Of a stretch of 64,000 nucleotides of DNA, positions 13,722 through 28,737 are shown one piece after another; positions within the stretch are counted from its first letter, which is position 1; every line of letters starts with the position of its first letter. Position numbers and translations under genes: made by a program. Source of the stretch: Asterias rubens (lineage: Eukaryota); assembly GCF_902459465.1 (NCBI RefSeq), contig NC_047062.1:17670001-17734000 (forward strand). Reading direction: 5' to 3'. The notes below the pieces were generated by a model. That model ran no database searches. It saw nothing but the letters and a program-made list of their open reading frames with translations, and was not told where the DNA came from.

Positions 13722-16700
13722 ATGTCATCGAACATGTTGTCGGAGGGACACATTTCAGAGATAGGATTGGAAGACCTGTCTGATTCCGATGAAATAGATT
13801 TTGGAAAAGATGATAAAGAAATACTCGTAAGTTGATTTTATACTCAATAATTTGCCTTTTATATATTTGGTTTGCGGTAACACCATGTGTGTATCTACTT
13901 GCGGGGTAGAGTGTGTTCCAGAGAACTGTCTTGTTTTATTCTTCTACCGCTGAGTAGACTTCTAAGTTCTGAAAAGAACTGCGTATTAACTATATTACCT
14001 GGGCGGATGGTATAGAAATAGGCTGGGACTACTATACAACTTTAGTAATTCAGTCAAAGTCTGATTTTTAGATTCTATGTCTGATATTTTGCGACTTTGC
14101 AGAAGTTTCTGTATACTTTTTGTTTTGAAAAAAGAATCATCTGTCAAAATTCATCCATAGACAAAATTCTTTCAAAACAAAATCTTGTTGAACTTCAATG
14201 ACTGATTGATTGTTAAAAAAAATATTCCTAAGGTTTTTATTAGGCTCAAGCTATAGGTAATGTGATTACTTTGAAAAATAAATTTAAAGTCTTTTCATTG
14301 TTTATAGATTTTGTTGTGTTTTTTTGCCAGCTGTGCAGTTGTATGCTCAACATGGAACAAGTTGAAAGTTATTAAAAACCACTCAATCTAATTTGAAAGT
14401 GTTAAAGCACTTTCAAATTAAAATTGAGTGGTTTTTAATATCTGATGTCTACACAAAGTGTTTGATCAGCGTAAACAATTTAAACACCTTTTCATTTTCA
14501 GGTAACACACAGTGACCTGTAGACAGCCTGTCCAGGCATCTTACCCTGGAAAATGCAACAAAATCCAAAGCATAAACATAAAAAGCCCAGTGATTTGTAA
14601 CAAATACCTTAGGCAAAGACAACTGTACCTTTTGTCATGATAACAATTTGCTATTGTCCCGTGCCTTATCAAATTTCTGTTCTGTTTTGGGATGTTTTAT
14701 AAGTTCGGCAAGTCTGATTTAATTCATATCAGATTCCACAAACAGAGTGGACAGAAGATTCAGCACAATTCGGATCCAATTGACCTGACTAAATTAAGCA
14801 GATGTTGAATTGATTTCAGCACTGGGTGGCTTCACAGTTCACGCCCCCTGTATCTACCACTCAGCGTAGGCCTGGCCTGGCTAATAATCTGTGGGCTAAA
14901 CCAACATAACCTTGGGCAACATGTGGTTTTACTGTATACTAATGAAGCTGTGCGTCAATTTTGACTCATGGTTGGGCTACAGATGGTATTAGGTCTCCTG
15001 TATTTTGGAGATATGAATTCCTCGGAAACCCTTTAAATTACATTGTTACCTAGTACCCAGTACATGTTTAGATCAAGATAATGTGGTTTGTTTATTTGTA
15101 TTATAAAACAACCCAAAGTCTGACTAAATTCTCATTTACAAAGTAAAAAAAAAAAAAAAAAAAAAAGTTAGTTTCATGTTTTAGTGTGGGACCATTGTGA
15201 CGCATTGTTACAGTAAACCTGCAGCCATGCTTTTATTGGGATGCAAATTTAATGCAAATTGACCCAAAACTAAAAATTGTTTTTTCTTTAACTGAGCAAA
15301 CACATGTCCCATCCTTCAAAACGACATTTGAAAAAGTCATCATTTAGCCTATAAAGTGATTATGTTATGATGAAGTTTTCATCAATTTTTGTCACCATCG
15401 CTCAAATTTCTTCATGTATTAATAGATTCATCATTATGTATTACTATTTGTTTTTTTGCAGTTGAGTAATTCAGAAGACGGCAGTACAGTCAAATTGCAG
15501 CGTCAGATAACCTTGCTGAGTGGAGTAGCCATCAATGTTGGCACCATCATTGGCTCCGGGATTTTTGTATCCCCTAAAGGTTTGTCAAGAATGACAAAGT
15601 CTTAAACTTTCACAATTGTACCAAGTTTCAAAACAATGCTAAATGAACACTTTTTCAGCAAGCAGTAAATCACATTTCTTTTGAACTCATCTCACAATTT
15701 AAAAGAAAAATGGGTGGGAAAAAATCTTAAGCCAATGAAAATCAACTTGTGAACAACAAAAACCAAGATCTTGTTTTTGTTTTTATATATATAGTAATGT
15801 GCGAATGTGAACAATAGCTCAACAGACATTAATAAGGTCAATGAACAGAATTAAAATTAGAATCTGATTGAAGGCTTAACAGAAACATTCTGATTGGCTT
15901 ATTAAATGGTTTCCAATGCTCTGATTGGTTAATCAAATGATGTATGGTACCCAGGAAACACTCTGCTTGTTTATGTATTGAAGAAGAATGTGTTCATGCA
16001 CACAGCATTTATTTGAAGGCCTGAATCCCTTCCTAAGAAATGTTGCCAACAACAGACTGGAAGACTGTTCCATAGGGGGACGGCAGGGTGGATGAACATT
16101 AATTGCTTTGAAAATGAACTTTTCCAACAACAGCTGGTGCACTGGAATTCTTAGTAGAATTTTAGTGAATGAAACCATTGTTGTTTTTTGAGCATTGTTA
16201 ACCTATTTGCTTCCTCCATTTGTCCTCATTAACAGGTGTTCTGCTGGGTGTTAGCTCTGTGGGAATGACCCTGATAGTATGGGTACTAGCGGGTATCATC
16301 TCTCTCCTGGGTGCCCTCTGCTTCGCCGAACTAGGCACCATGTTCCCCTCGTCTGGGGGGTTCTACTTCTATCTCAGAGAGATCTACGGTGAATTTGCAG
16401 CGTTCCTGTTTTTGTGGGTGTCGCTTATTATGCAAGTGCCAGCCTCCTGTGCAGTGGTGGCGATCACATTCGGGCGTTATGCCGTGCAGCCATTTTTCCC
16501 GTCTGCGGATTGTGAACCACCGATGTTTGCCATTCAGCTGCTTGCCTTGAACTCTGTGTGTGAGTATATTGCACTGGGAATGCTAGGAGTAGAGGCTTAG
16601 AGGTAGAGTACAGGCCTTGGTGCCCTTGAAAGGGCAAGGGCACCAAGGCATTTTTTTGCTTGATAAAGGGCACCACCCTATGAGAGAAATTGTAAATTTC

Positions 16701-19700
16701 TACTGGAGCATTTCAAGGGCACCAAGGCAATGACCATGGGGCACGAAGGTAATTGTCTTTGTTGCTTCTGTGAAGTATCAAACCTGAGAGTAGCCATAGA
16801 GGTAGATGTAAGATTTATCTGAGGGTGAAGGGTGTTAGAATGCCTTACTTAAGGACACTTGCATCATGATCCCACTATTCGGACCCAAGTTAAAGATGGC
16901 ACTGAGAGATTTCATATTTACTACCTTTAAGGAGAACGAGAGGAAAACAGGAAAAGGGAAACACAAAGGGTCTCCATAGGGTTATTCTATAAAGACGGGG
17001 GTGCTCCACATGGAATTTTGTGTACAAAGTCTCTGAGAGGTTCAAAGGAGAGAACAAAAAGTTGGAAAGAACAAATGATACAAATGTAGGGAACCCAAGT
17101 GCGCCCTCGGTGTTCATATTGTTGGACCGGCTTCCTTCCCATGTCTCTACATAGAGAAAAGGTTTTTAAAATTTGAGTGTTTTTTTGAAATGGGTTAAAG
17201 AGCTCAACTGATCCCTTCCTTGTAATAACATTTTTCGACTTTATGCCAATTTTTATTGGAGCAGGTCACATATCAGGATTTAAATCCTAAATTGGACAAT
17301 TCTGGTTTCCATGTAGTGTTGTGCGGGTTCTTCAACATCTTCAGTGTACGCTTGACGACTGCCGTGCAAAACATCTTCACTGTGTTCAAGATGCTGGCAC
17401 TGACAATCATCATTGTCATGGGTGCAGTGCAGATATTCAGAGGTAAAATAAGGACAACATTTCATTTACATGGCTCGAATTATACACTGGACTGCAGGCC
17501 TGAGGCCAGTGGTTTTAGTGTCAAGGGCCAGTTTACTTATGATTGGACAGGTTCGATGGTCATGTGTATTTTCAATTGAATAAAAAATACCTCACTGTGT
17601 AATATCACGAACAAAAACAAAATATTTATGCACAAGTGTTGACTTTGACTCTGATAAACATCTTTCAATCTGATTGAGTAATGAAGTATACCTAATTTTC
17701 CAAAAGACAGATAAGAGAAATCTTCTCTTGTAACATGTCTTTCTTAAAGCTTTAAATTCAAATAAAAACATACTTGTTAACTAAACTGTGTCAGTGTCAG
17801 TACTCGGGACGTTCTCCTTTGATTCTGGTCTGGTACACAAGATTCTGGTCTGGTACACAAGATTCTGGTCTGGTACACAAGATTCTGGTCTGGTACACAA
17901 GATTCTGGTCTGGTACACAAGATTCTGGTCTGGTACACAAGATTCTGGTCTGGTACACAAGATTCTGGTCTGGTACACAAGATTCTGGTCTGGTACGCAA
18001 GATTCTGGTCTGGTACACAATATTCTGGTCTGGTACACAAGATTCTGGTCTGGTACACAAGATTCTGGTCTGGTACACAAGATTCTGGTCTGGTACGCAA
18101 GATTCTGGTCTGGTACGCAAGATTCTGGTATGGTACACAAGATTCTGGTCTGGTACACAAGTTTCTGGTCAAGTAAACATTTGTCTTGAAGATTATTGTT
18201 CTCCCAAATTTGAGCCCCGACTCAGATGGGCAACTACACAGAAATCTTCTCTGAGTCGCAAAGAATAAATGCTGTACATTTCTGGCCTGGAGTTTCATAT
18301 TCAAGATGGCATATTTCCATGTTGCAAAGTGCTCTTCCATTGGAAAATCTCAAGGTCTGTGAGCAAGTTTTGAAGGGCACAAATGCCCAAACTAAGGTGT
18401 ACTAATAGGCCTAGTCCCTGGTCTGATTAACAGCTGCTAACCTACATGTGTGGCTATTAAAGGGGAAAGTTTGTGTGTCTATTTATTGCAGGTGAAACAA
18501 CCAGTTTTGAGAATTCATTTGAAGGGACAACATACGGTGGCCTTGGAAATGCCTTATACTCCGGCCTTTTTTCATATGCTGGCTGGTAAGTTGGGGTTCC
18601 CTGAACTAAAGTTGTCTAATGTGATTATAAAAATAAAATAAAAATAACATGTAGGGCCCTCCTATAAAGAGGTTATTTCTTTATGTAAATGCATGGATGA
18701 ATGTGGTGTGAGATTTGAACTTTATTTCTTAGTTTCAGTTTGGGATTCTCCTGAAATAATCGTCGTTGGTCAGGGTTTGCCCTTACTGTTTATAGGGACA
18801 AGCAAGAAGCAAGCAGGACCCGTTACCTTGTTATGTAGTCAATCAGCTTTTCAGTAGTTCAAACTTGAAACAAGCTTGCCCACTAAGAGAGAATTTTGGG
18901 AGAGCAGCTGTAAACACTTTTTCTTCCATCGGTTTGAGAATCTGGCATACATTAATTTGAATTACTTTTTATCATTTTCTCTGATACAGGTATAACTTAA
19001 ACAACGTTGTTGAGGAACTTAAGAACCCGTACAAGTAAGTGATTGGACCGAACATCTCCCTTACTCGTCACCCTAATGGGCCAGGAATCTTATCTTGAGA
19101 GGGATAATACAGGCCATTTTGATTAGGAATTGGACAATTCAATCGGGAAATCTTGACATTTCTCAATGCGATGTGCACTTACATTGTGGCATGTTGGGCG
19201 AGCGGACAAGAAAATCTGACTCCAGCTCTGGTGTTTCTGATCAGCAGAGTGTGGGTTCGAGTCCCGGAGGTGTGTTTCATGTCATGATAGGGAGTCAATA
19301 TGGGAAACAGTAGTGGCTGCTGTGTAATTCAAGGTCTGAACCAAGAATTTCCAGCCTAGTGCTCCTTTTCCAATCATTTTAAAGCACTGAATAAAATCTA
19401 CATGGTTTCTATTGACACATGAGTCAAGTTCTCATCAGGCTTTGTCGATTTGTTTGATATCGTCCCCCCAAAACGACACAAAAATAATTAAAATTGTTGA
19501 ATTTGATTAAATCGTAACCTTTTTTTGTTTCAATTCATTTGCAGAAATCTACCCCGTGCTATTTATATTACCATGACGATAGTGACAATATTTTATGTTT
19601 TTGCCAATGTTGCCTACTTCACCGCAATGACACCTCAAGAGCTACTTGCATCCGATGCCGTCGCTGTGGTAAGCGTTTTTGTTTGAGAAAGCGATTGCAA

Positions 19701-22700
19701 TTTTACAATTATGTACTGAGCAAGTGGAGATCTTTCTTTTATAGTTAAAAATGTTTGGACATACAGATCACAAGTTGGATGCGTCCACCGTGCATGTTCT
19801 GATCAGCTGCAGAAGAAATTGCCAATACAACAGCAGTGTAGATCATTACTCCAGACTTTTGAAAATAAATAGCTATGTTATATTATAAACAGTTTTTTTG
19901 TTGTTACACACTAACCAGACTTGTAGTTGACTGAAAATGATAATTAAAGATGTTTTGGTCAACCTTTGAAAGTAACACTAAGACTAGACTTGTGGACAAG
20001 TCATTACATGTTTCTTACGGTGATAGCGTAACAGCCCTCCGGGGACTCGCACGATACTGTTGTTGTCTCAGGAGCCAGCAGTCTCACAAGAACATTACCA
20101 GTGTTGCGGGATTCGCAGAGAGTGTTGGTACGCTATCACCGTGACAAATATTTAACAACTTGCCCACAAGTCTACACTGAGATGGGAGCAAATATCCCTG
20201 GGGAGCAAATATCCCTGGGAGTATGGAAGACAAAAACTTCAAATAGCAAGATACGGGGTTGGGTAGTCAAGGACTTTAATGCAAGATTTTGCAAATTTTG
20301 TTTCAAAGTTGGGGAAGTATACTTTAACTTAAACATAAGAGGTACAGTCAAATACCTGTTCAACTGGTACCTCAAATATTATGTTAGATTCGGGTAGACT
20401 CTTAAAGCTGCACCAGTTTTCCAGTTAAGTTCTTCTCTTTTGAATTGAGGATAAGGTTTGGGTGGAGGGGAGATTTAGTTTGCAGAAATGTTTCCATCCT
20501 CTGTTATTTTATGGCTGTATTAGACATATGGCCTTAAGCTTCTCGGAATTCTTGCTTGGATCATGCCGCTTTCTGTTGCCATGTCAACCTTTGGATCCAA
20601 TAATGGGAACTTTCTTGCGTTTTCAAGGTATAAAGACAAATTCAGCATACGATTTAAAAACTCCAACATTTAAAACTCTGTTGTCCTCCCAACTTTCTCA
20701 AAATTACAATCAACAACATCACATTTGTGTTAATTATGCAAAAAAACTCATGCCCAAAATCATTTGTATGTTTGTTAGCGTAAATTAAACTACATACATG
20801 CTCGTTTGCCTCATCACTCCTAGAACTAAAATCCATCATTTGGACATTATTTCTTTGAAGAACAGTCAGCAAAAAATGATTACACATCCAACAGCACAAT
20901 TAGCACCAATAACAGGGGGAAAAATTGTCAGTTTTAGATGTGGGAGGAAAACCCCAATGGGGAAAAACCAATGTCCAGTTAGGGACTAAAAACCCGATCC
21001 ACATGGCTCCAGTCTGAGGTGGGATTCGAACCGGGGTCCACAGAGTTGAAAAACAGGGAACGAAAACCACTAACCTGATCCCTAGTTAGTGAACATTTTA
21101 AAGTGGTTCAGGGCCAGAGATTCTATGTGGCTAACTTCTTCTGTTATTTATCGGGGCCATGTTGTTAGCAATTCGGAGTAAAACTGCTGGGAATTATTGC
21201 TTGGATAATGCCGCTGTCTGTTGCCATGTCAACCTTGGGATCTAATAATGGAAGTTTCCTTGCCTTCTCAAGGTATATACACCAAGCAATTTTTTTTAAA
21301 ATAAATTTTACGCTTCTCTCAAACATCTTTTATATTTATGCAATCATATTTTTATTTAAATTTATTCATTAAGTGAAATGAATGCTTTTGGTAAGAAGAT
21401 TGGTTTTTGTTTTCAAGAAACATCAGGGCAGGAAGTATTTTGTATAAAATACCAGTCAATCAGACCATGGGGTTTGTACGGGTTGTATTGGTCTGAGATC
21501 AATAACTAAAGTATGTTGTTTCCAGCAAACGTTTTCAGAACAAAATATATACAAACTGTAGGGACAAAAACCCACCAAAACTTATTTGCAACTCAATATT
21601 GGCATTCAGTTTGAACAAAATAAGTTCAGTCTAAGTTGTTTGCTATGAAAAATTGCTGAGCGAAGTCACAAAACAAAAACAATGTTATCTTGTGCCATTG
21701 TACCAATGGTGACAAATATTTATTGGGTTGTCATTTTTTTGTATCAATTTTCAGTCATTTTACCAAAACTATTTTCCTGGCTTTTATCATGAATTTAAAA
21801 AATCAATGCAGCTATGACATTTGCAATTTTCTATAGCTTTTTTTCTTCCTCTCCTTTTAAAATTGCTTCTAATCATATTGCCTTTAAATGCTTTTTACCT
21901 TATTTTCATTCCAGCACAAGTTTGGAAACACGGCCAAAGAGATTTAAACATTTGGTCGCTAGAGTTGTTCAAGGCTACCTCACCGTTAGATGAGAAACTG
22001 AGCACTGATACTCCTTTTTAAACTGATCAGTTAATATCATTCAAATGGGTTTTTATATGAACAAAGGCAATTGTCAATTTCTTTCTAAGTGTTCTAAACA
22101 AATGTCCTTGGCTACCTAGGCAATTCCAGCCGTTTCTTTGTACATTTCAGGACCTTCTGACTAAAAATTTGCCCTTATACAAGATATGAACAAATTGAAA
22201 GCAAATTTTTTACGCCACATCATCTTGATTATTGAGGCACACTTATTAATCTTGAGGGGACAAGGTTCCAAAATAAGCAATATACAAACTTGCTGTCCAT
22301 CAATTAGAAGTTTAAATTCCTTTATTATTTTGGTGCAATAATTTAGCTATTCGGCCAGAGACTACTAGGAGTTGTTGCTTGGATTTTGCCGGTTTCTGTT
22401 GCCATGTCAACCTTTGGATCTAATAATGGGGGTTTTCTGTCTTTCTCAAGATATACATATCATGTACACATAGACAAAAGATGAAAGATTTGAAATCAAC
22501 TCATTAGATTCTCTTGAACACATTTTCTTTCATCATACTTTATTTTAGTGTAAAACTTAAAAGGTGTGTACTTTTGGTTGGAGGATTGAAAGTGAGCTAA
22601 CATTTTTAAATTACCTAAAACAAAATTATCTGGGCCGGGACTGCCTGAATTTTTGGTTTTTTGTTGTTGTCAGTATTGTCTGAAATATCTTCTATTACTA

Positions 22701-25700
22701 CTTCCGTTTGTGTTTTGAAAAACCTACTGCACGAATATTTTATAGCATCTTTACATTTTTGATTCATTTTACCCAAGGTATACATCTTGCTTTTATCATG
22801 AATTTTACGATATCAATACAGCCATTACTTTTACAATTTTCTTTCTTCAAAATTTTTCTTTTTCAAATTGCTTCTGATCATACTGCTCCTAATCTCATTT
22901 GCATTACAGCACACGTTTAGAAACACAAGACTGCTTTTCAGTTAGATAAGAAACATCTCTATTTCCTCCATTTCAACTTGCATTTCTTTGTAAACCTTTT
23001 TTATAATCAAAGTAAAGGCAACCTTCAAATGACAAATTTATTTCCAATTGTTACAGGCCGAGACTCTTGGTACTTGGTCAATAGCACTCTGCACTCTAGT
23101 TGGTTTTCAGACAACTTAAAAGTTAGTTTTGAATTGACTGTTCAAGTTTACACACTGCATTCTGAACCCTGAATGAAGTTGAATGATATTGACTGATCAG
23201 TCACTAGGAGGGCCAGGGCTTTATAACCAGGGTTACCATCATTGTATATTGACCTGCCAGATATTGTACTTACATGCTTTTATGTCCATTATGCAATCAT
23301 GCTTAAATGTTTGTTTCACTTAAAAGCCAAGCCAAAACTATTGAACATTGGAAGTAAGTTGCATTGCCAAAGCAACAATACAATGAAAGTCCAGGTAAGC
23401 ATTTATCACAATTGCCATCATCAGAGCGATCTAAAAACTGTTGCTGTTTTTTGGCTGTTTTATTCAGACATTTGGTATCAAGGTCCTTGGTGTGTTTGCA
23501 TGGTGTATGCCAGTGTTCGTTGCGATGTCGACATTTGGCTCAAATAACGGAAGCCTTCTCGGCTTATCTAGGTAATTGTTGACCAATGTAGACTATTACA
23601 CACATGCAAGGAGGTTGTTTTTCAAAATGAATCATTGATAATGATCAAGGCCAGATATAATTTGTAAGGGATAGTTGACAATAACATCAGTTTTAAAAGA
23701 ATATTGTCAAACTCGTAACATTATAAGACCAATGGTAACATATTATCTGATGGTTGAATTCAATGTTGGTACAGTACATTACAATCTGATTGTTGTACTC
23801 CTACAGTGTCCAAAGTGAAATGCCAAAAAATGTGTTGCATTATTCTAAATTTATCTTCTTTAAAAAATATTTTATATCTAAAACGTAAAAAAAACCACTA
23901 GAGATAATCTTTTGTCATTGCAGAAGTGAAATCGCAATTAAATTCTTTACATGCCAGTAAATCCATTTGTTTGCGTTTCCTACAAGAGATGACAGACTTT
24001 GCTGATGCTGTCGTGTAATTAATTTACGCAAATTTGGTCCGCCATGTATGTGTGTGTAATAGTCTATTCTATAACTGTAAACAAAGAGAACAAAGAATGC
24101 TGTAATGACAATAAACACAACAAAGGGGACCACTTTGCATCCACCACATCAGTAGCTCTTCCAGTGGTTGTAAATTTGTGTAAGTACCTGAAACCACCCA
24201 CCCAAATAAGTATTTCAATATAAAAGGTCATGCAGGCTTATACTGAAAATAGTTTTAGTTTATTCAATTTGTTAAAAGTCTTCTTTTTTTAAATCATCCT
24301 CAATTTTCCATAATGGACTGACAAATTTATAATAATATATTCATAATAATAATAAATAATAAGTTGTTCTTACATAGTGCATTTTACAATAATCTATCAA
24401 TGTGTGCTTAACATTAGTCTCTGGTCATTGGCAAGGACACAAGTGTCATCTCCGGGAGTCAAACCCTGCCTCCGATGACTCCAGACCACTAGAACTTGAA
24501 TGACACCCACTATTAAATTGAAAATGAAGGGTACTCTAAACATAATGCTCCTGAATAGCGCAGATGGGTACATGCTACCGAATAATCAAGTCAAACATGT
24601 TCAATATTAGCCTGCATGTCCATTCACATACTGGAACACTTTTCGGGTGGTTTCAAGTACGTGACGTATATTACAACAATAGGGAAAACTGATGCAAACT
24701 CGTCCGCTTTATTGTGTTTCATGTCTTATAACTTTTGATTGTAGAAATAAAATGATAACATGAATCCAAGCATTGTGATTGGGAAAAAAAATCTGAACAA
24801 AATCTAAAGAACTGACCTCTCATAATTTTACTTCTCACTCAATGTTTTTTTTTCCAACACTCTGTATGGAAGGCGACGATACTTAAATTTGAAACTCAAC
24901 AAAACCACAAAGTTCAGAACAAGAAATGGCAATTTAACTTTGATTTTTTTCACACTCATTCAGTCCATTTGTTACCATATTAAAGTCCAATTTCAGTGCA
25001 ACTCATTTTCAGCAACGAGATCATGCTTTACAACTTAACTCACTTTTTACCTTTTAAATTTTTCATTCATACTTTGCACTCCAAACACAATGCTACTGAA
25101 TATCACAGATGGGTACATGTTACTGATTATGTGATATTTAACCGCACTTTAGGAAACTTACTGCTCAATTATGTCTAGAACTAATGACGATATTAAGAGT
25201 AAAACAAGCAACAACAAATAGTTCATTGAGGTAACATTGTAATCACAACAAAAGGGGACTTATTTTAACAGGAAACTGGGTTTAAAGTGATGGTCCAGTT
25301 TAAACAAAAAAGGGGGAACACCCAAACTAAATTGAAAGCAAAACATTGAGTTCTTCAATTAAATAATTAAATTTCTCCAAAAATGAGATGCTTGGTTTAC
25401 GATCTTTATACAAATGGCTGTGGTCCATGCCTGTAGCTCCAAAGGGTGACAGTACCCACATATGACTTTGCAAATTTGGCACCAATGAACCTCCTACATT
25501 CTACTACTTGTTTAACCCAATTTCATGGCACATTCAATTGTGGCTTTCTGCACTTAGTTCATCATTATCAACCTGTGGTTTGAAAATCCACTTGTTTTAC
25601 CAACAATCATTAGTGAAGACAACTAATGCAATCAAGTATTACATTATCTTAAAGAGGTTCACTTGCAGAATTAAAAAACTAATAATTCTTAGGCATACAG

Positions 25701-28700
25701 TTTTGCTTACAATAAAGAAAGGTATGGCGTTGTGCTGAAAAATGTCAGCCGTAGTGGGTCGGAGTTCAAACTAAGGTTTAAACAATTTGTTGATGTTTTC
25801 TCAGAATTCAAAAGACCCTTATTACACCTTGCTATTGGGATTGATTCAGTATTTAACGATTAGGGTTACTGGATACTGGAATGCATCCTATTAATCAATG
25901 TGTTTTTCTTGTTGTAGAATGTTCTTCGTTGGGGCCAGAGATAGACAGCTGCCTAATGTCCTTGCTATGATTGATATCAAGAGGAAGACCCCTATGCCTT
26001 CTCTTCTCGTCGTGGTATGTCAACAAATTACATCATCCAAACCTTTCCAGTCCAATCAGATTTCTTTGTAGATTGCAGGGAACGATTTTTCGTCCAGCAA
26101 TTTTGCGTTAGACTGGAAGGTTTTGAACACACTGAATGATAATATTGAGTAGCAATCGGTGATTTATGAGCAGCAACTGAGACATTTTGCAGAGCATTTT
26201 GCTCTTCGAAGGAAATCGTTCACTGGATTGTCCATTTATGAACACAAATTTTGTAGATTTTTCAATAACACAAATTCTTTTAATAACACAAAACCCAAAT
26301 GTTTGGTCTTATATCTTGTACAGGCTATTCTTTCTTGGACACATTGTAAATGGTACAATGTCATGCAACTTGAATTGGTCTTGATGATTGAATACATTCA
26401 AGATTTACATGTCTATTCTTGGCCGAAACACGTAGAGCTGCTTAAGTAGAAAAAACTGATTCTGCTTTAGCGAAAATGAGCAGGATACCAGTCACAGATG
26501 CTACATGCGATGCGACATAGTATATTTGCTGGTAACCTTATTTTAGCAAGCATAATTTTGCTTCATGCTACTTGTTGTGCTTAAGCAGCTTTAAAAACAA
26601 ATTGAAATTCAACCTCTAGGTAAAAAGTTTTCATCAGGAACCATTATCTAATTCTCCAATTATCTTCAAATTTTGAATAACTATGTTATCTCTCTACTTC
26701 CTCAGACATTCCTGACATGTGTGTACGTGTTTGCCAAGGATGTCTACACACTCATCAACTATTTCAACTTTGTCCTGTGGACATCCAGTGGGGCTCTGTC
26801 TGCCGGACTGTTATATCTACGATGGAAGAAACCTGAAATGTCGAGACCATACAAGGTTGGTGCAGTTTCCTTCAGCAAATTGTATATTATAAATTTGTAG
26901 GATTTGAAACTTTGCATGGTGGAAATAAGATATAGAAGAGTTTGCGGTAACACCATGTAATAACAATCTCTAAATGAGTTGGGGTGGTTCTGAAAAGAAC
27001 CGTTGGATTAACTCGACGTTTCGATCAGTATGCTCTGATCGTCTTCTGGAGAATGCTGGACTCTGATGCTGCATGCTGCTTAAGTACTGAGTGGCGGATT
27101 AGCTTGGTGATGCACGAAGGCGGGAAATAGAGGCGGGAAGTGCAGCAGCATGCAGCATCAGAGTCCAGCATTCTACAGAAGACGATCAGAGCATACTGAT
27201 CGAAACGTCGAGTGAATCCAACGGTTCTTTTCAGAACCACCCCAACTCATTTAGAGATTGTTATTACATGGTGTTACCGCAAACTCTTCTATATATTATA
27301 AATTTATTATGTTTATCAAAAGACGCTCACAGGGGTATATATGTTTGGTTATGACGGCTCAACCATAAGCCTTGGGTCTGGTCAGAAAATACAGTTTTCC
27401 GCTCTGCAGATTCCACCAGAGTATTTGTCGGTTGATTTTTTTACAAGACTCGGGGAAAGTTTTCAGTGTACAGTGATTGTATAGGAAAATAACATGCATA
27501 ATGTTCTTTATCTCTGATACAATTTAACATCTTACAAATTAATGCAGTACTCGCTGCTAAAACGTAGGATTCAAACTGCCTCTGGCTACCTGGTAAAATG
27601 TGTTGGTCTAGTGGTAAGACATCTGCTCTAGAATGATTAGAAAAAGGTCCTGGGTTCAAATCCCACCTGAGTAACAGGCACCTAACTTTTTCCCAACAGG
27701 TTTACGAAGAAGGGTCCTATGAGATTGGTTTGTAACTATGTATTCTTTCCTGCTCATAGGTTTTCATTGGTCTGCCTATCTTCTTCACCATTGCATCATT
27801 TGCCCTGGTTGTCTTGGGGACAATCTCGGCTCCGTTAGACACCCTTATTGGAGTTGCCATCACCTTAACAGGAGTACCATTCTACTTCATCTTAATCAGA
27901 CCTGCTAAGATTCCGAAATTCCTCCACAAGATTGAAGGTAAGCAAGGTTGAGACTGTGATTGGAGGATAGATATTTTAGAGTTGAAATTTGGTGAAAGAT
28001 ACTGACTTGAGAATTGGGAATGATGCAGAACTGAGATTGAAGGGAAGATACCAATTTGAGATTTGATGAAAGATACTGACTTGAGAATTGGGAATGATGC
28101 AGAACTGAGATTTAAGGGAAGATACCAATTTGAGATTTGATGAAAGATACTGACTTGAGAATTGGGAATGATGCAGAACTGAGATTGAAGGGAAGATACC
28201 AATTTGAAATTTGGTGAAAGATACTGACTTGAGAATTGGGAATGATGTAGAACTGAGATTGAAGGGAAGATACCAATTTGAGATTTGATGAAAGATACAG
28301 AGCTGAGAACAAGTATTGAGTTGAGATTTAGAGAAGAAAAAAAAAACAAAAACAGAATTGAGATAAAAGATACAGAATTGAGATGAATGCAGAATTGATA
28401 TTGGAGGAAAGATAGAGAACTCACTGAGAAAGAAGGAAAGATACTGAATTGAGATTGAAGGAAAGAAACTGAGTTGTTATAAGAAGAAATATTCCGAATT
28501 GAGAATGAAAGAAAGATACTGAATTGAGAAAGAAGTAAATATACCGAAATGAGGTTGAAGGAAAAGTACAGAACTGCTTCTTGCATTCATTTTTGCCTGG
28601 AATTTTAGACAGAACTCCCTGTGTTTTGACACTTGCACATTTTTAATTAAGTTCACGTTTTAATTTCTGTAGTTGGTGTCACTCACTGGTGCCAAAAGCT

Positions 28701-28737
28701 GTTCCTAGTCACCAATGAAGAGAAGAAGAAGAAGTGA
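13722..28737 (+). CDS. SLC7-family (LAT/y+LAT/xCT/b0,+AT-type) heteromeric amino-acid transporter light chain, 509 aa
   Basis: Exons 13722-13826, 15462-15579, 16236-16559, 17317-17442, 18492-18585, 18990-19034, 19545-19668, [one of four 104-nt exons], 25918-26014, 26706-26855, 27760-27937, 28673-28737. All are GT-AG (using copy A, B or D) with consistent phases, 1530 nt in total. Motifs: TM1 [26 protein letters not shown]6 [45 protein letters not shown]. The subfamily cannot be assigned by eye. Confidence 0.96.
16610..16785 (+). mobile_element. Interspersed repeat, 'GGGCACCAAGGC' family
   Basis: Matches 5630-5760; lies in an SLC7 intron. Confidence 0.6.
17821..18170. repeat. 20-bp minisatellite (GATTCTGGTCTGGTACACAA) x about 17.5
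   Basis: Near-perfect tandem array without spacers; it explains the repetitive ORFs at 17774-18340. Confidence 0.98.
20524..20627 (+). CDS. SLC7 TM8 exon copy A ([35 protein letters not shown])
   Basis: TTAG| acceptor, AG|GTATAA donor, 104 nt, phase 0 to 2. Confidence 0.9.
20928..21076 (-). mobile_element. tRNA-derived SINE, family B
   Basis: B-box-like GGTTCGAATCCC on the - strand; similar to 33573-33733 and 48610-48760. Confidence 0.7.
21169..21272 (+). CDS. SLC7 TM8 exon copy B ([35 protein letters not shown])
   Basis: TTAG| acceptor, AG|GTATAT donor, 104 nt, phase 0 to 2. Confidence 0.9.
22347..22450 (+). pseudogene. SLC7 TM8 exon copy C ([35 protein letters not shown]), donor mutated to AT
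   Basis: Open 104-nt frame with TTAG| acceptor, but followed by ATATAC instead of GT. Confidence 0.7.
23468..23571 (+). CDS. SLC7 TM8 exon copy D ([35 protein letters not shown])
   Basis: TTCAG| acceptor, AG|GTAATT donor, 104 nt, phase 0 to 2; the most divergent copy. Confidence 0.92.
26435..26595. mobile_element. Interspersed repeat / MITE, 'GCTGCTTAAG' family
   Basis: Termini GCTGCTTAAG...CTTAAGCAGC; related copies at about 38690-38850 and 60335-60515. Confidence 0.6.
26897..27291. mobile_element. Foldback element with about 151-bp inverted arms, 14-bp TSD and hammerhead-like motifs (Penelope-like non-autonomous element)
   Basis: Arms at about 26929-27080 and 27144-27294; TATATTATAAATTT at 26883-26896 and 27292-27305; motif CAGAAGA-C-GATCAG-agcata-CTGATC-GAAAC-GTC in each arm. 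The Penelope assignment is inference. Confidence 0.7.
27595..27700 (+). mobile_element. tRNA-derived SINE fragment, family A
   Basis: A-box-like TGGTCTAGTGG and B-box-like GGTTCAAATCCC. Confidence 0.55.
27980..28300. repeat. 74-bp tandem repeat x about 4.3, decaying into GA-rich low complexity to about 28570
   Basis: GAAAGATAC recurs at 27994, 28068, 28142, 28216 and 28290. Confidence 0.95.

What the first reader, a model, noticed from the sequence alone, without database searches (positions are those of the whole stretch)
20524..23571. Four-way tandem exon cassette in an SLC7 transporter: candidate mutually exclusive splicing of TM8
Seen: four paralogous exons (20524-20627, 21169-21272, 22347-22450, 23468-23571), each exactly 104 nt and phase 0 to 2. 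They sit between the single constitutive exons 19545-19668 (ends phase 0) and 25918-26014 (starts phase 2). All four keep an open frame, and their differences include synonymous and conservative changes, which suggests purifying selection. Any one copy gives a complete 509-aa protein. Two or three copies shift the frame because 104 is not a multiple of 3, so NMD could enforce exclusivity. The introns between copies are over 500 nt, too long for steric exclusion. No other exon of the gene is duplicated. Inference: a Dscam-style cassette yielding 3-4 transporter isoforms from one gene. I do not know of this being described for SLC7 light chains.
Basis: partly seen in the sequence, partly recalled or inferred. 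Interest (0 to 1): 0.92.

Follow-up and report, generated by a model that had tools for sequence, protein, structure and literature searches.

The report
Alternative TM8 exons, starfish amino-acid transporter
A starfish (Asterias rubens) amino-acid transporter gene holds three extra, unannotated copies of the exon for its eighth membrane helix; selection has kept such a spare copy intact in four starfish species, so the gene probably makes alternative transporter versions one copy at a time, but no transcript using a spare copy has been seen yet.

Summary
Four paralogous 104-nt exons (A 20524, B 21169, C 22347, D 23468) lie between single-copy exons of the Asterias rubens gene "Y+L amino acid transporter 2-like". 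This is an SLC7 light chain, and the cassette matches LAT1 residues 314-347, most of TM8.

New here:
- Copy D is the default exon. It is the only copy in all annotated isoforms of four sea stars and the only one spliced in four RNA runs.
- The spare exon type is old. Patiria and Acanthaster each carry one spare copy plus D, and Asterias amurensis carries A, B, C and D.
- Spare exons evolve like coding sequence: dN/dS is 0.05-0.14, variable sites by codon position are 9/6/28, and the only A/B changes between the two Asterias species are four synonymous ones.
- Copy C has lost its GT donor in this genome and carries only amino-acid changes, so it may be decaying.
- Any combination other than exactly one copy gives an early stop codon.

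No docking/selector RNA pairing was found, so "Dscam-style" is unsupported. No transcript containing A, B or C was seen.

Verdict: a probable mutually exclusive exon cluster, supported by evolution but not by expression. The nearest precedent is SLC7A2 CAT-2A/2B. It is a new member of a known kind and of moderate interest.

The parts
19545..19668 (+). Constitutive upstream exon (TM7 region; ends in phase 0)
   Evidence: 100% match to P0270 residues 271-312; AG acceptor and GT donor
20524..20627 (+). Spare exon A ([34 protein letters not shown]); ttag acceptor, GT donor
   Evidence: Identical peptide in A. amurensis, with 4 substitutions that are all synonymous. dN/dS about 0.05 against the Patiria spare exon. 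In the RNA runs it is covered only by unspliced low-depth contigs.
21169..21272 (+). Spare exon B ([34 protein letters not shown]); ttag acceptor, GT donor
   Evidence: No substitutions in 104 nt against A. amurensis, while the neighbouring introns differ by about 4.6%. A-B dN/dS is 0.10.
22347..22450 (+). Spare exon C ([34 protein letters not shown]); the donor is AT in this genome
   Evidence: A. amurensis has GT at this donor. The 2 substitutions between the two species both change an amino acid. dN/dS is about 0.3 against A and B. C is sister to B in the exon tree, and its downstream intron is homologous to the one after B.
23468..23571 (+). Default exon D ([34 protein letters not shown]); tcag acceptor, GT donor
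   Evidence: The 23571->25918 junction is the only cassette junction found in mRNA contigs of 4 RNA runs. D is the only copy in all annotated isoforms of 4 species.
25918..26014 (+). Constitutive downstream exon (starts in phase 2; [13 protein letters not shown]...)
7698..28737 (+). Whole gene. Alternative first coding exons lie near 7698-7826 (isoform X2) and 13722-13832 (X1). The remaining exons are 15462-15579, 16236-16559, 17317-17442, 18492-18585, 18990-19034, 19545-19668, the cassette, 25918-26014, 26706-26855, 27760-27937, and 28673 to the stop codon.
   Evidence: tblastn of P0270 and P0269 against the window, plus splice sites read from the sequence

Best explanation
This is a cluster of mutually exclusive exons made by tandem exon duplication in an SLC7 heteromeric-amino-acid-transporter light chain. 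Exon D is the default version of TM8. A second, spare version of the exon arose before the forcipulatid (Asterias) and valvatid (Patiria, Acanthaster) sea stars split, and it has been kept as coding sequence since. In the Asterias lineage it was copied again, giving A, B and C.

Inferred steps:
- In some tissue, stage or condition not sampled here, the spliceosome picks A or B instead of D. The result is a transporter with a different TM8.
- The two exon types differ consistently at five cassette positions: 13 (Cys in D, Ile in spare), 17 (Phe/Ser), 30 (Leu/Phe), 32 (Gly/Ala or Ser) and 33 (Leu/Phe). Cassette position 29 matches the pocket residue LAT1 Ser342 and reads Asn, Ser, Gly, Ser in A, B, C, D.
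- These changes probably retune substrate affinity, selectivity or exchange kinetics.
- Exclusivity is enforced at least by the reading frame. Zero, two, three or four copies all give a premature stop at least 375 nt before the last exon junction, which should send the mRNA to nonsense-mediated decay.
- Copy C is probably being lost in A. rubens, because its donor has changed from GT to AT.
For: Shown:
- Four copies of equal length and phase are present; A, B and D have AG/GT sites.
- The gene is an SLC7 light chain. Its best PDB matches are LAT2, xCT, Asc-1, LAT1 and y+LAT1/2, and the cassette aligns without gaps to LAT1 314-347. TM8 belongs to the hash domain and to the TM1-TM8 coordination site (PMC11922002, PMC6472337, PMC7988154).
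- A spare exon plus D, with intact splice sites and an open frame, is present in A. amurensis (four copies), Acanthaster planci and Patiria miniata (two copies each).
- Between orders only exons align. The spare exon is an 85%-identical island, similar to the constitutive exons at 83-85%.
- Selection: Apla-Pmin spare exon dN/dS is 0.14; A against the Pmin spare exon is about 0.05; A-B is 0.10. Under random placement of the observed substitutions, so few amino-acid changes without a stop occur with P <= 0.00025. Variable sites by codon position are 9/6/28.
- A. rubens against A. amurensis: A has 4 synonymous and 0 nonsynonymous changes, B has none, and the introns differ by 3-7%.
- Every combination other than single inclusion gives an early stop codon.
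- The spare exons have weaker acceptors (tag in 4 of 5) than D (cag in all species), as expected for regulated exons.
Against: - No spliced transcript with A, B or C was seen. In four RNA runs, two per Asterias species, the only cassette junction in mRNA contigs is D->25918 (depth 12-92). A and B are covered only by low-depth contigs that run straight through their splice sites.
- None of the 8 full-length RefSeq proteins of this gene in four species contains a spare exon.
- A search for protein fragments carrying a spare exon found nothing relevant.
- These negatives are weak. The RNA data were assembler contigs, which drop rare variants, and the tissues are unknown.
- Copy C has no usable canonical donor here.
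- No competing RNA structure or other dedicated exclusivity device was found.
Confidence: 0.62

Rival explanations
1. Regulatory poison exons. A, B and C are included together with D, or in place of it, only to shift the frame and send the mRNA to nonsense-mediated decay, which lowers transporter output. No alternative protein is made.
For: Double inclusion gives a stop codon 375 nt or more before the last junction. Such transcripts would be unstable and rare, which would explain why none was seen.
Against: A poison exon needs no particular peptide. These exons show strong amino-acid-level constraint in exactly the frame that replaces D (dN/dS 0.05-0.14; codon positions 9/6/28). They also keep the invariant TM8 motif SxxGSNNG and the exact length of 104 nt in four species.
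Confidence: 0.12
2. Silent relics. The spare exons are leftover duplicates that are never spliced, and their similarity is kept up by gene conversion from D or is simply recent.
For: No expression evidence. Copy C shows decay in A. rubens: donor loss and 2 nonsynonymous against 0 synonymous changes. In A. amurensis B and C share a long identical run, which hints at some conversion between copies.
Against: The spare type is distinct from D at five fixed positions in both sea-star orders, so conversion from D is excluded. Synonymous sites are saturated between orders while the peptide is kept. An unused 104-nt stretch would have become unalignable, as the surrounding introns have.
Confidence: 0.1
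3. A Dscam/14-3-3-zeta-type mechanism. Exon choice is made by a docking site that pairs with one selector sequence next to each variable exon.
For: The cluster has more than two variable exons and long introns, the layout in which such pairing is known from arthropods (PMC6071210). A perfect 16-nt inverted repeat lies just after the D donor (23589-23604 and 24051-24066) and is identical in A. amurensis.
Against: No intronic block is conserved between orders apart from about 10-35 nt next to the exons. No single arm pairs with partners next to several exons. The best long stem around exon C (22022/23179) has three uncompensated changes in A. amurensis.
Confidence: 0.08
4. Assembly artefact or collapsed haplotypes.
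For: None beyond the tandem arrangement.
Against: The copies differ by 19-35%. Six DNA runs hold about 80% of the sampled words. The same four copies, in the same order, occur in an independent A. amurensis assembly.
Confidence: 0.01

Closest known systems
SLC7A2 CAT-2A / CAT-2B (vertebrate cationic amino-acid transporter)
   Same: It belongs to the same SLC7 superfamily. Two tandem homologous exons are used mutually exclusively (listed among tandem-exon-duplication substitutions in PMC8373072). The swapped segment lies at the cytoplasmic end of TM8 and the TM8-9 loop and changes substrate affinity about ten-fold; the authors suggest this works through TM8 stability (PMC5803215).
   Different: It belongs to a different branch: 14-TM CATs rather than 12-TM heavy-chain-dependent light chains. 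It has two exons rather than four. The segment lies just C-terminal to the sea-star cassette rather than being the same exon. Its expression and function have been shown experimentally, which is not the case here.
Generic tandem-duplicated mutually exclusive exon pairs (SLC25A3 3A/3B, CACNA1C 8/8a, SCN exon 5a/5b)
   Same: Exons of equal length and equal phase, derived by tandem duplication. They replace one transmembrane segment, are ancient, and are under purifying selection (PMC9741552, PMC5740500, PMC12772994).
   Different: Those have transcript and often disease evidence. Most are pairs. Here the spare exon was further triplicated in one lineage and is absent from all annotations.
Arthropod multi-exon clusters (Dscam1, Mhc, 14-3-3-zeta)
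   Same: More than two variable exons in a row with long introns.
   Different: Those use docking/selector competing RNA structures (PMC6071210). No such pairing was detectable here. The only exclusivity device that can be shown here is frame incompatibility.

Membership tests
SLC7 heteromeric amino-acid transporter light chain (LAT-type, APC superfamily) | Full-length similarity to solved light chains and the AA_permease_2 domain | tested here: met
   PDB hits to xCT, y+LAT2, LAT2, Asc-1, b0,+AT and LAT1 at E 1e-22 to 1e-51. PF13520 and PF00324 are recorded for P0184 and P0190.
SLC7 heteromeric amino-acid transporter light chain (LAT-type, APC superfamily) | Conserved Cys in the TM3-TM4 extracellular loop that bonds to the heavy chain (LAT1 Cys164; position from my own knowledge) | tested here: met
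   The Cys in FPSADCEPP (window exon 16236-16559) falls at about LAT1 164-166 by the coordinates of the alignment, and aligns with the Cys of the xCT-like P0140. The disulfide itself was not tested.
SLC7 heteromeric amino-acid transporter light chain (LAT-type, APC superfamily) | Assignment to a particular subtype (y+LAT, LAT, xCT and so on) | tested here: inconclusive
   RefSeq names it 'Y+L amino acid transporter 2-like', but identity to every vertebrate subtype is similar (about 45-55%) and LAT2 scores best over TM7-TM9. No orthologue above 61% identity was found outside sea stars.
Mutually exclusive exon cluster from tandem exon duplication | Adjacent homologous exons of the same length and phase | tested here: met
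   4 x 104 nt, phase 0 to 2
Mutually exclusive exon cluster from tandem exon duplication | Each variant has usable splice sites | tested here: inconclusive
   A, B and D have AG...GT. C has AG...AT in A. rubens but GT in A. amurensis. For C, an in-frame GT 12 nt downstream exists but is weak (read).
Mutually exclusive exon cluster from tandem exon duplication | Each variant is under coding constraint | tested here: met
   Met for A, B, D and the valvatid spare exon. For C the constraint is relaxed or unclear.
Mutually exclusive exon cluster from tandem exon duplication | Mature transcripts contain exactly one variant, and each variant is used | tested here: inconclusive
   Only D-containing mRNAs were seen. 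The RNA data were assembler contigs from four runs of unknown tissue.
NMD-enforced exclusivity (frame-incompatible exons) | Zero or multiple inclusion creates a premature stop more than 50-55 nt before the last junction | tested here: met
   All 9 tested combinations stop 375-727 nt before the last junction. Actual decay of such transcripts was not tested.
Docking/selector competing RNA structures (Dscam type) | A conserved docking site complementary to a selector next to each variable exon | tested here: not met
   No conserved intronic blocks between orders. No arm with several partners. The candidate stem is not conserved. Weak or short pairings could have been missed.
U2/U12 splice-site incompatibility or steric exclusion | U12-type donors (RTATCCTT), or an intron too short for two spliceosomes | tested here: not met
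   The donors are gtataa, gtatat, atatac and gtaatt. The introns are 541-1074 nt.

The most novel reading that the evidence does not exclude
Sea stars diversify the substrate pocket of one heavy-chain-dependent amino-acid exchanger by exon choice rather than by gene duplication. An alternative TM8 exon, dating to before the split of the two sea-star orders sampled and missing from every current annotation, was expanded to three copies in Asterias. The gene can therefore give three or four transporters that differ at the LAT1-Ser342-equivalent pocket residue (Asn, Ser, Gly) and at five fixed hash-domain positions. These would be used in tissues or stages not yet sampled.
Probability: 0.5. Interest if true: 0.55.

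Novelty: new member of a known kind. Interest (0 to 1): 0.42.

Why it matters
If the spare exons are used, this would be the first case I could find of mutually exclusive splicing in the light-chain (LAT/y+LAT/xCT) branch of SLC7. It would be a natural swap of TM8, a helix that helps form the substrate pocket and the TM1-TM8 coordination site. The natural variants (Asn, Ser or Gly at the LAT1 Ser342 position, and Cys/Ile, Phe/Ser, Leu/Phe at fixed positions) would be ready-made mutants for structure-function work on a drug-target family.

It would also parallel the CAT-2A/2B affinity switch near TM8 in the vertebrate CAT branch. On the practical side, RefSeq annotation of four sea-star genomes misses a conserved coding exon.

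Tried and rejected
- Looking for alt-exon isoforms among database proteins. All members of the two 90% clusters use D. No fetched protein carries the spare-type motif of this gene. A profile of the cassette with short flanks, aimed at short fragments, returned one unrelated protein.
- Scanning JGI metagenome contigs for the spare-exon->downstream junction found nothing. The D->downstream control also found nothing, so the collection simply lacks this transcript and the result is uninformative.
- A second sequencing-run search centred on exon B with 70-100-nt intron flanks, meant to separate spliced holders (about 0.3 of the words) from unspliced ones (about 0.8). The Asterias RNA runs are explained by unspliced contigs already seen.
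- My first attempt to align window exon pieces to a reference protein misaligned them. A reduced alignment worked and led to the orthologues.
- A contig in run X3 that joins exon B to the intron downstream of C looked like a B/C fusion allele. It is better explained by the long run that B and C share in A. amurensis, meaning an assembler path or gene conversion.
- Docking/selector search, Rfam and tRNA: nothing found.
- Structure prediction was not run.
Full report
**Observation.** The window holds four paralogous exons at 20524-20627 (A), 21169-21272 (B), 22347-22450 (C) and 23468-23571 (D). Each is 104 nt long and open in the frame set by the single-copy exon 19545-19668. Each runs from phase 0 to phase 2 and joins in frame to the single-copy exon 25918-26014. 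A, B and C are 80-81% identical to one another and 65-70% identical to D. A, B and D have AG acceptors and GT donors. Copy C reads CTCAAG|atatac, so it has no GT donor. No other exon of the gene has a second copy.

**Identity of the gene.** Exon 16236-16559 matches solved SLC7 light chains (xCT, y+LAT2, LAT2, Asc-1, b0,+AT, LAT1) at E 1e-22 to 1e-29. A library-wide search and a profile search led to P0184. Its 90% cluster contains the Asterias rubens proteins "Y+L amino acid transporter 2-like": X1 (P0270, 509 aa), X2 (P0269) and X3 (P0272). It also contains two A. amurensis isoforms. The exon translations from the window match the A. rubens proteins exactly from exon 2 to the stop codon, so the window is A. 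rubens. The gene runs from about 7698 to 28737. It has two alternative first coding exons and a 45-nt microexon at 18990-19034. The cassette is P0270 residues 313-346. It aligns without gaps to LAT1 314-347, which is most of TM8. LAT1 Phe344 and Phe351 are on TM8 (PMC7988154), and TM8 is part of the hash domain (PMC11922002). The Ser of the cassette's MST motif corresponds to BasC Ser282 / Asc-1 Ser325 at the TM1-TM8 contact (PMC6472337) and is invariant in all copies. Cassette position 29 corresponds to LAT1 Ser342, which is described as a pocket residue (PMC8715508). It reads Asn, Ser, Gly and Ser in A, B, C and D.

**Which copy is used.**
- All eight full-length RefSeq proteins of this gene carry D. 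They come from A. rubens, A. amurensis, Patiria miniata and Acanthaster planci, and the isoforms differ only at the N-terminus.
- I laid contigs from four RNA runs on 20030-26029, two runs labelled organism A and two labelled organism B. The differences organism B shows from the window are exactly those of the A. amurensis assembly.
- The only cassette junction seen in mRNA contigs is 23571->25918, at depth 41, 92, 17.5 and 12.
- Exons A and B are covered only by low-depth contigs (3-7x) that run straight through acceptor and donor. That is pre-mRNA or DNA carry-over.
- So D is the default exon, and there is no transcript evidence for A, B or C.
- This negative is weak. Assembler contigs drop rare variants, the tissues are unknown, and only one read-laying run was allowed.

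**Comparative evidence.** I fetched the orthologous loci.
- A. amurensis has the same four copies in the same order. All have AG...GT sites, including copy C.
- Acanthaster and Patiria each have two copies: a spare-type exon (..[23 protein letters not shown]) upstream of a D-type exon. Both are 104 nt with AG...GT sites.
- Between the orders nothing aligns in these introns except the exons and about 10-35 nt beside them. The spare exon is 85% identical between Patiria and Acanthaster, like the constitutive exons at 83-85%.
- dN/dS is 0.14 for the valvatid spare exons, about 0.05 for Asterias A against the Patiria spare exon (synonymous sites near saturation), and 0.10 for A against B.
- When the observed number of substitutions is placed at random, so few amino-acid changes without a stop occur with P <= 0.00025. 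Variable sites among the spare exons fall 9/6/28 by codon position.
- Between the two Asterias species, A has four substitutions, all synonymous. B has none in 104 nt. D has four, all synonymous. The introns differ by 3-7%.
- Copy C differs from the others. Both of its substitutions change an amino acid, its dN/dS against A and B is about 0.3, and its donor is mutated in A. rubens.
- Five cassette positions separate the D type from the spare type in every species: 13 (Cys/Ile), 17 (Phe/Ser), 30 (Leu/Phe), 32 (Gly/Ala or Ser) and 33 (Leu/Phe). This rules out homogenisation from D and points to two distinct, maintained versions of TM8.
- The nearest homologues have a single copy of the exon. These are from a brittle star, a crinoid, a sea cucumber and a sea urchin, plus the neighbouring inverted paralogue in Acanthaster. 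The pair therefore appears specific to sea stars.
- The exon tree and the homologous downstream introns show that C arose from B as a unit of about 1.0-1.2 kb.

**Mechanism.**
- Shown in silico: skipping all copies, or including two, three or four, produces a stop codon 375-727 nt before the last exon junction. Only single inclusion can give a full protein. The other products should be removed by nonsense-mediated decay (inference from the standard rule).
- Not found: U12-type sites, introns short enough for steric exclusion, or docking/selector pairing. No intronic blocks are conserved across orders. No arm has several partners. The best stem around exon C has three uncompensated changes in A. 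amurensis.
- A perfect 16-nt inverted repeat just after the D donor is identical in both Asterias species, but it cannot be evaluated at this divergence.
- The spare exons have weaker acceptors (tag in four of five) than D (cag in all), which fits regulated use.
- Functional effect (inference): replacing TM8 alters the pocket and the packing of the hash domain, and so affinity, selectivity or kinetics. The vertebrate precedent is SLC7A2. There, mutually exclusive exons at the cytoplasmic end of TM8 and the TM8-9 loop change arginine affinity about ten-fold, which the authors suggest works through TM8 stability (PMC5803215, PMC8373072).

**Rivals.**
- Poison exons are unlikely, because the constraint acts on the peptide in the D-replacing frame.
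- Silent relics are unlikely, given conservation across orders while the introns have randomised. Copy C in A. rubens may be on that path, though.
- An assembly artefact is excluded by the DNA runs and by a second assembly.

**Novelty and score.** Mutually exclusive exon clusters made by tandem duplication are a well-known kind, and the SLC7 family already has one in its CAT branch. Full-text searches found no report for the light-chain branch or for echinoderms. I class this as a new member of a known kind. The evolutionary support for function is strong, transcript support is absent, and one of the four copies is probably dying in this genome. Interest is moderate at 0.42. My confidence that at least A or B is used as a mutually exclusive alternative to D is 0.62.

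**Earlier notes of this scan.** Another first-stage note on the same stretch (s1-150376) pointed to the LAT1 Ser342 position. I confirmed that mapping by alignment. The scan also lists other candidate exon cassettes elsewhere in this genome. I did not examine them.

Noticed in passing
window 22451-22463: Copy C's donor is AT in A. rubens but GT in A. amurensis. A weak GT 12 nt downstream (catGTacac) would keep the frame but would insert four residues into the conserved SRMFF motif.
   Followed up: partly
window 20830-21060: A repeat in the A-B intron reaches depth 120-650 in all four RNA runs, with many loose ends. It looks like an expressed interspersed repeat and has a B-box-like stretch (gggattcgaaccgg), but ARAGORN and Rfam find nothing. 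A related high-depth patch lies at 24430-24500.
   Followed up: partly
window 17821-18170: A 20-nt minisatellite, 17.5 copies at 97% identity, in the intron after exon 17317-17442. It produces long spurious ORFs on both strands.
   Followed up: partly
window 23589-23604 and 24051-24066: A perfect 16-nt inverted repeat starts 18 nt after the D donor. Both arms are identical in A. amurensis. Its function is unknown and could not be tested by covariation.
   Followed up: partly
window 18990-19034: A 45-nt microexon ([14 protein letters not shown]) with phase 2 to 2. It is easy to miss, but it is present in the RefSeq proteins.
   Followed up: yes
window 7698-7826 and 13722-13832: Two alternative first coding exons give the annotated X2 and X1 N-termini. 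The same pair of N-terminal types exists in A. amurensis and Patiria.
   Followed up: partly
L008 (Acanthaster planci, about 4.4 kb from the L002 gene on the same scaffold, opposite strand): A neighbouring inverted paralogue (P0276, 80-93% identical per exon) has only a D-type exon, whose last residues have diverged (SVLAIS).
   Followed up: partly
L001 17844-17947 (A. amurensis copy C): Copy C carries Leu at cassette position 23, as B does, and shares a long identical run with B. This is either gene conversion between B and C or the cause of a chimeric contig in run X3.
   Followed up: partly
runs X15 and X16: RNA-labelled runs of two other organisms hold 3-4 of 22 sampled words from exon B and its flanks. 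This may mean a conserved exon B in relatives' RNA.
   Followed up: no
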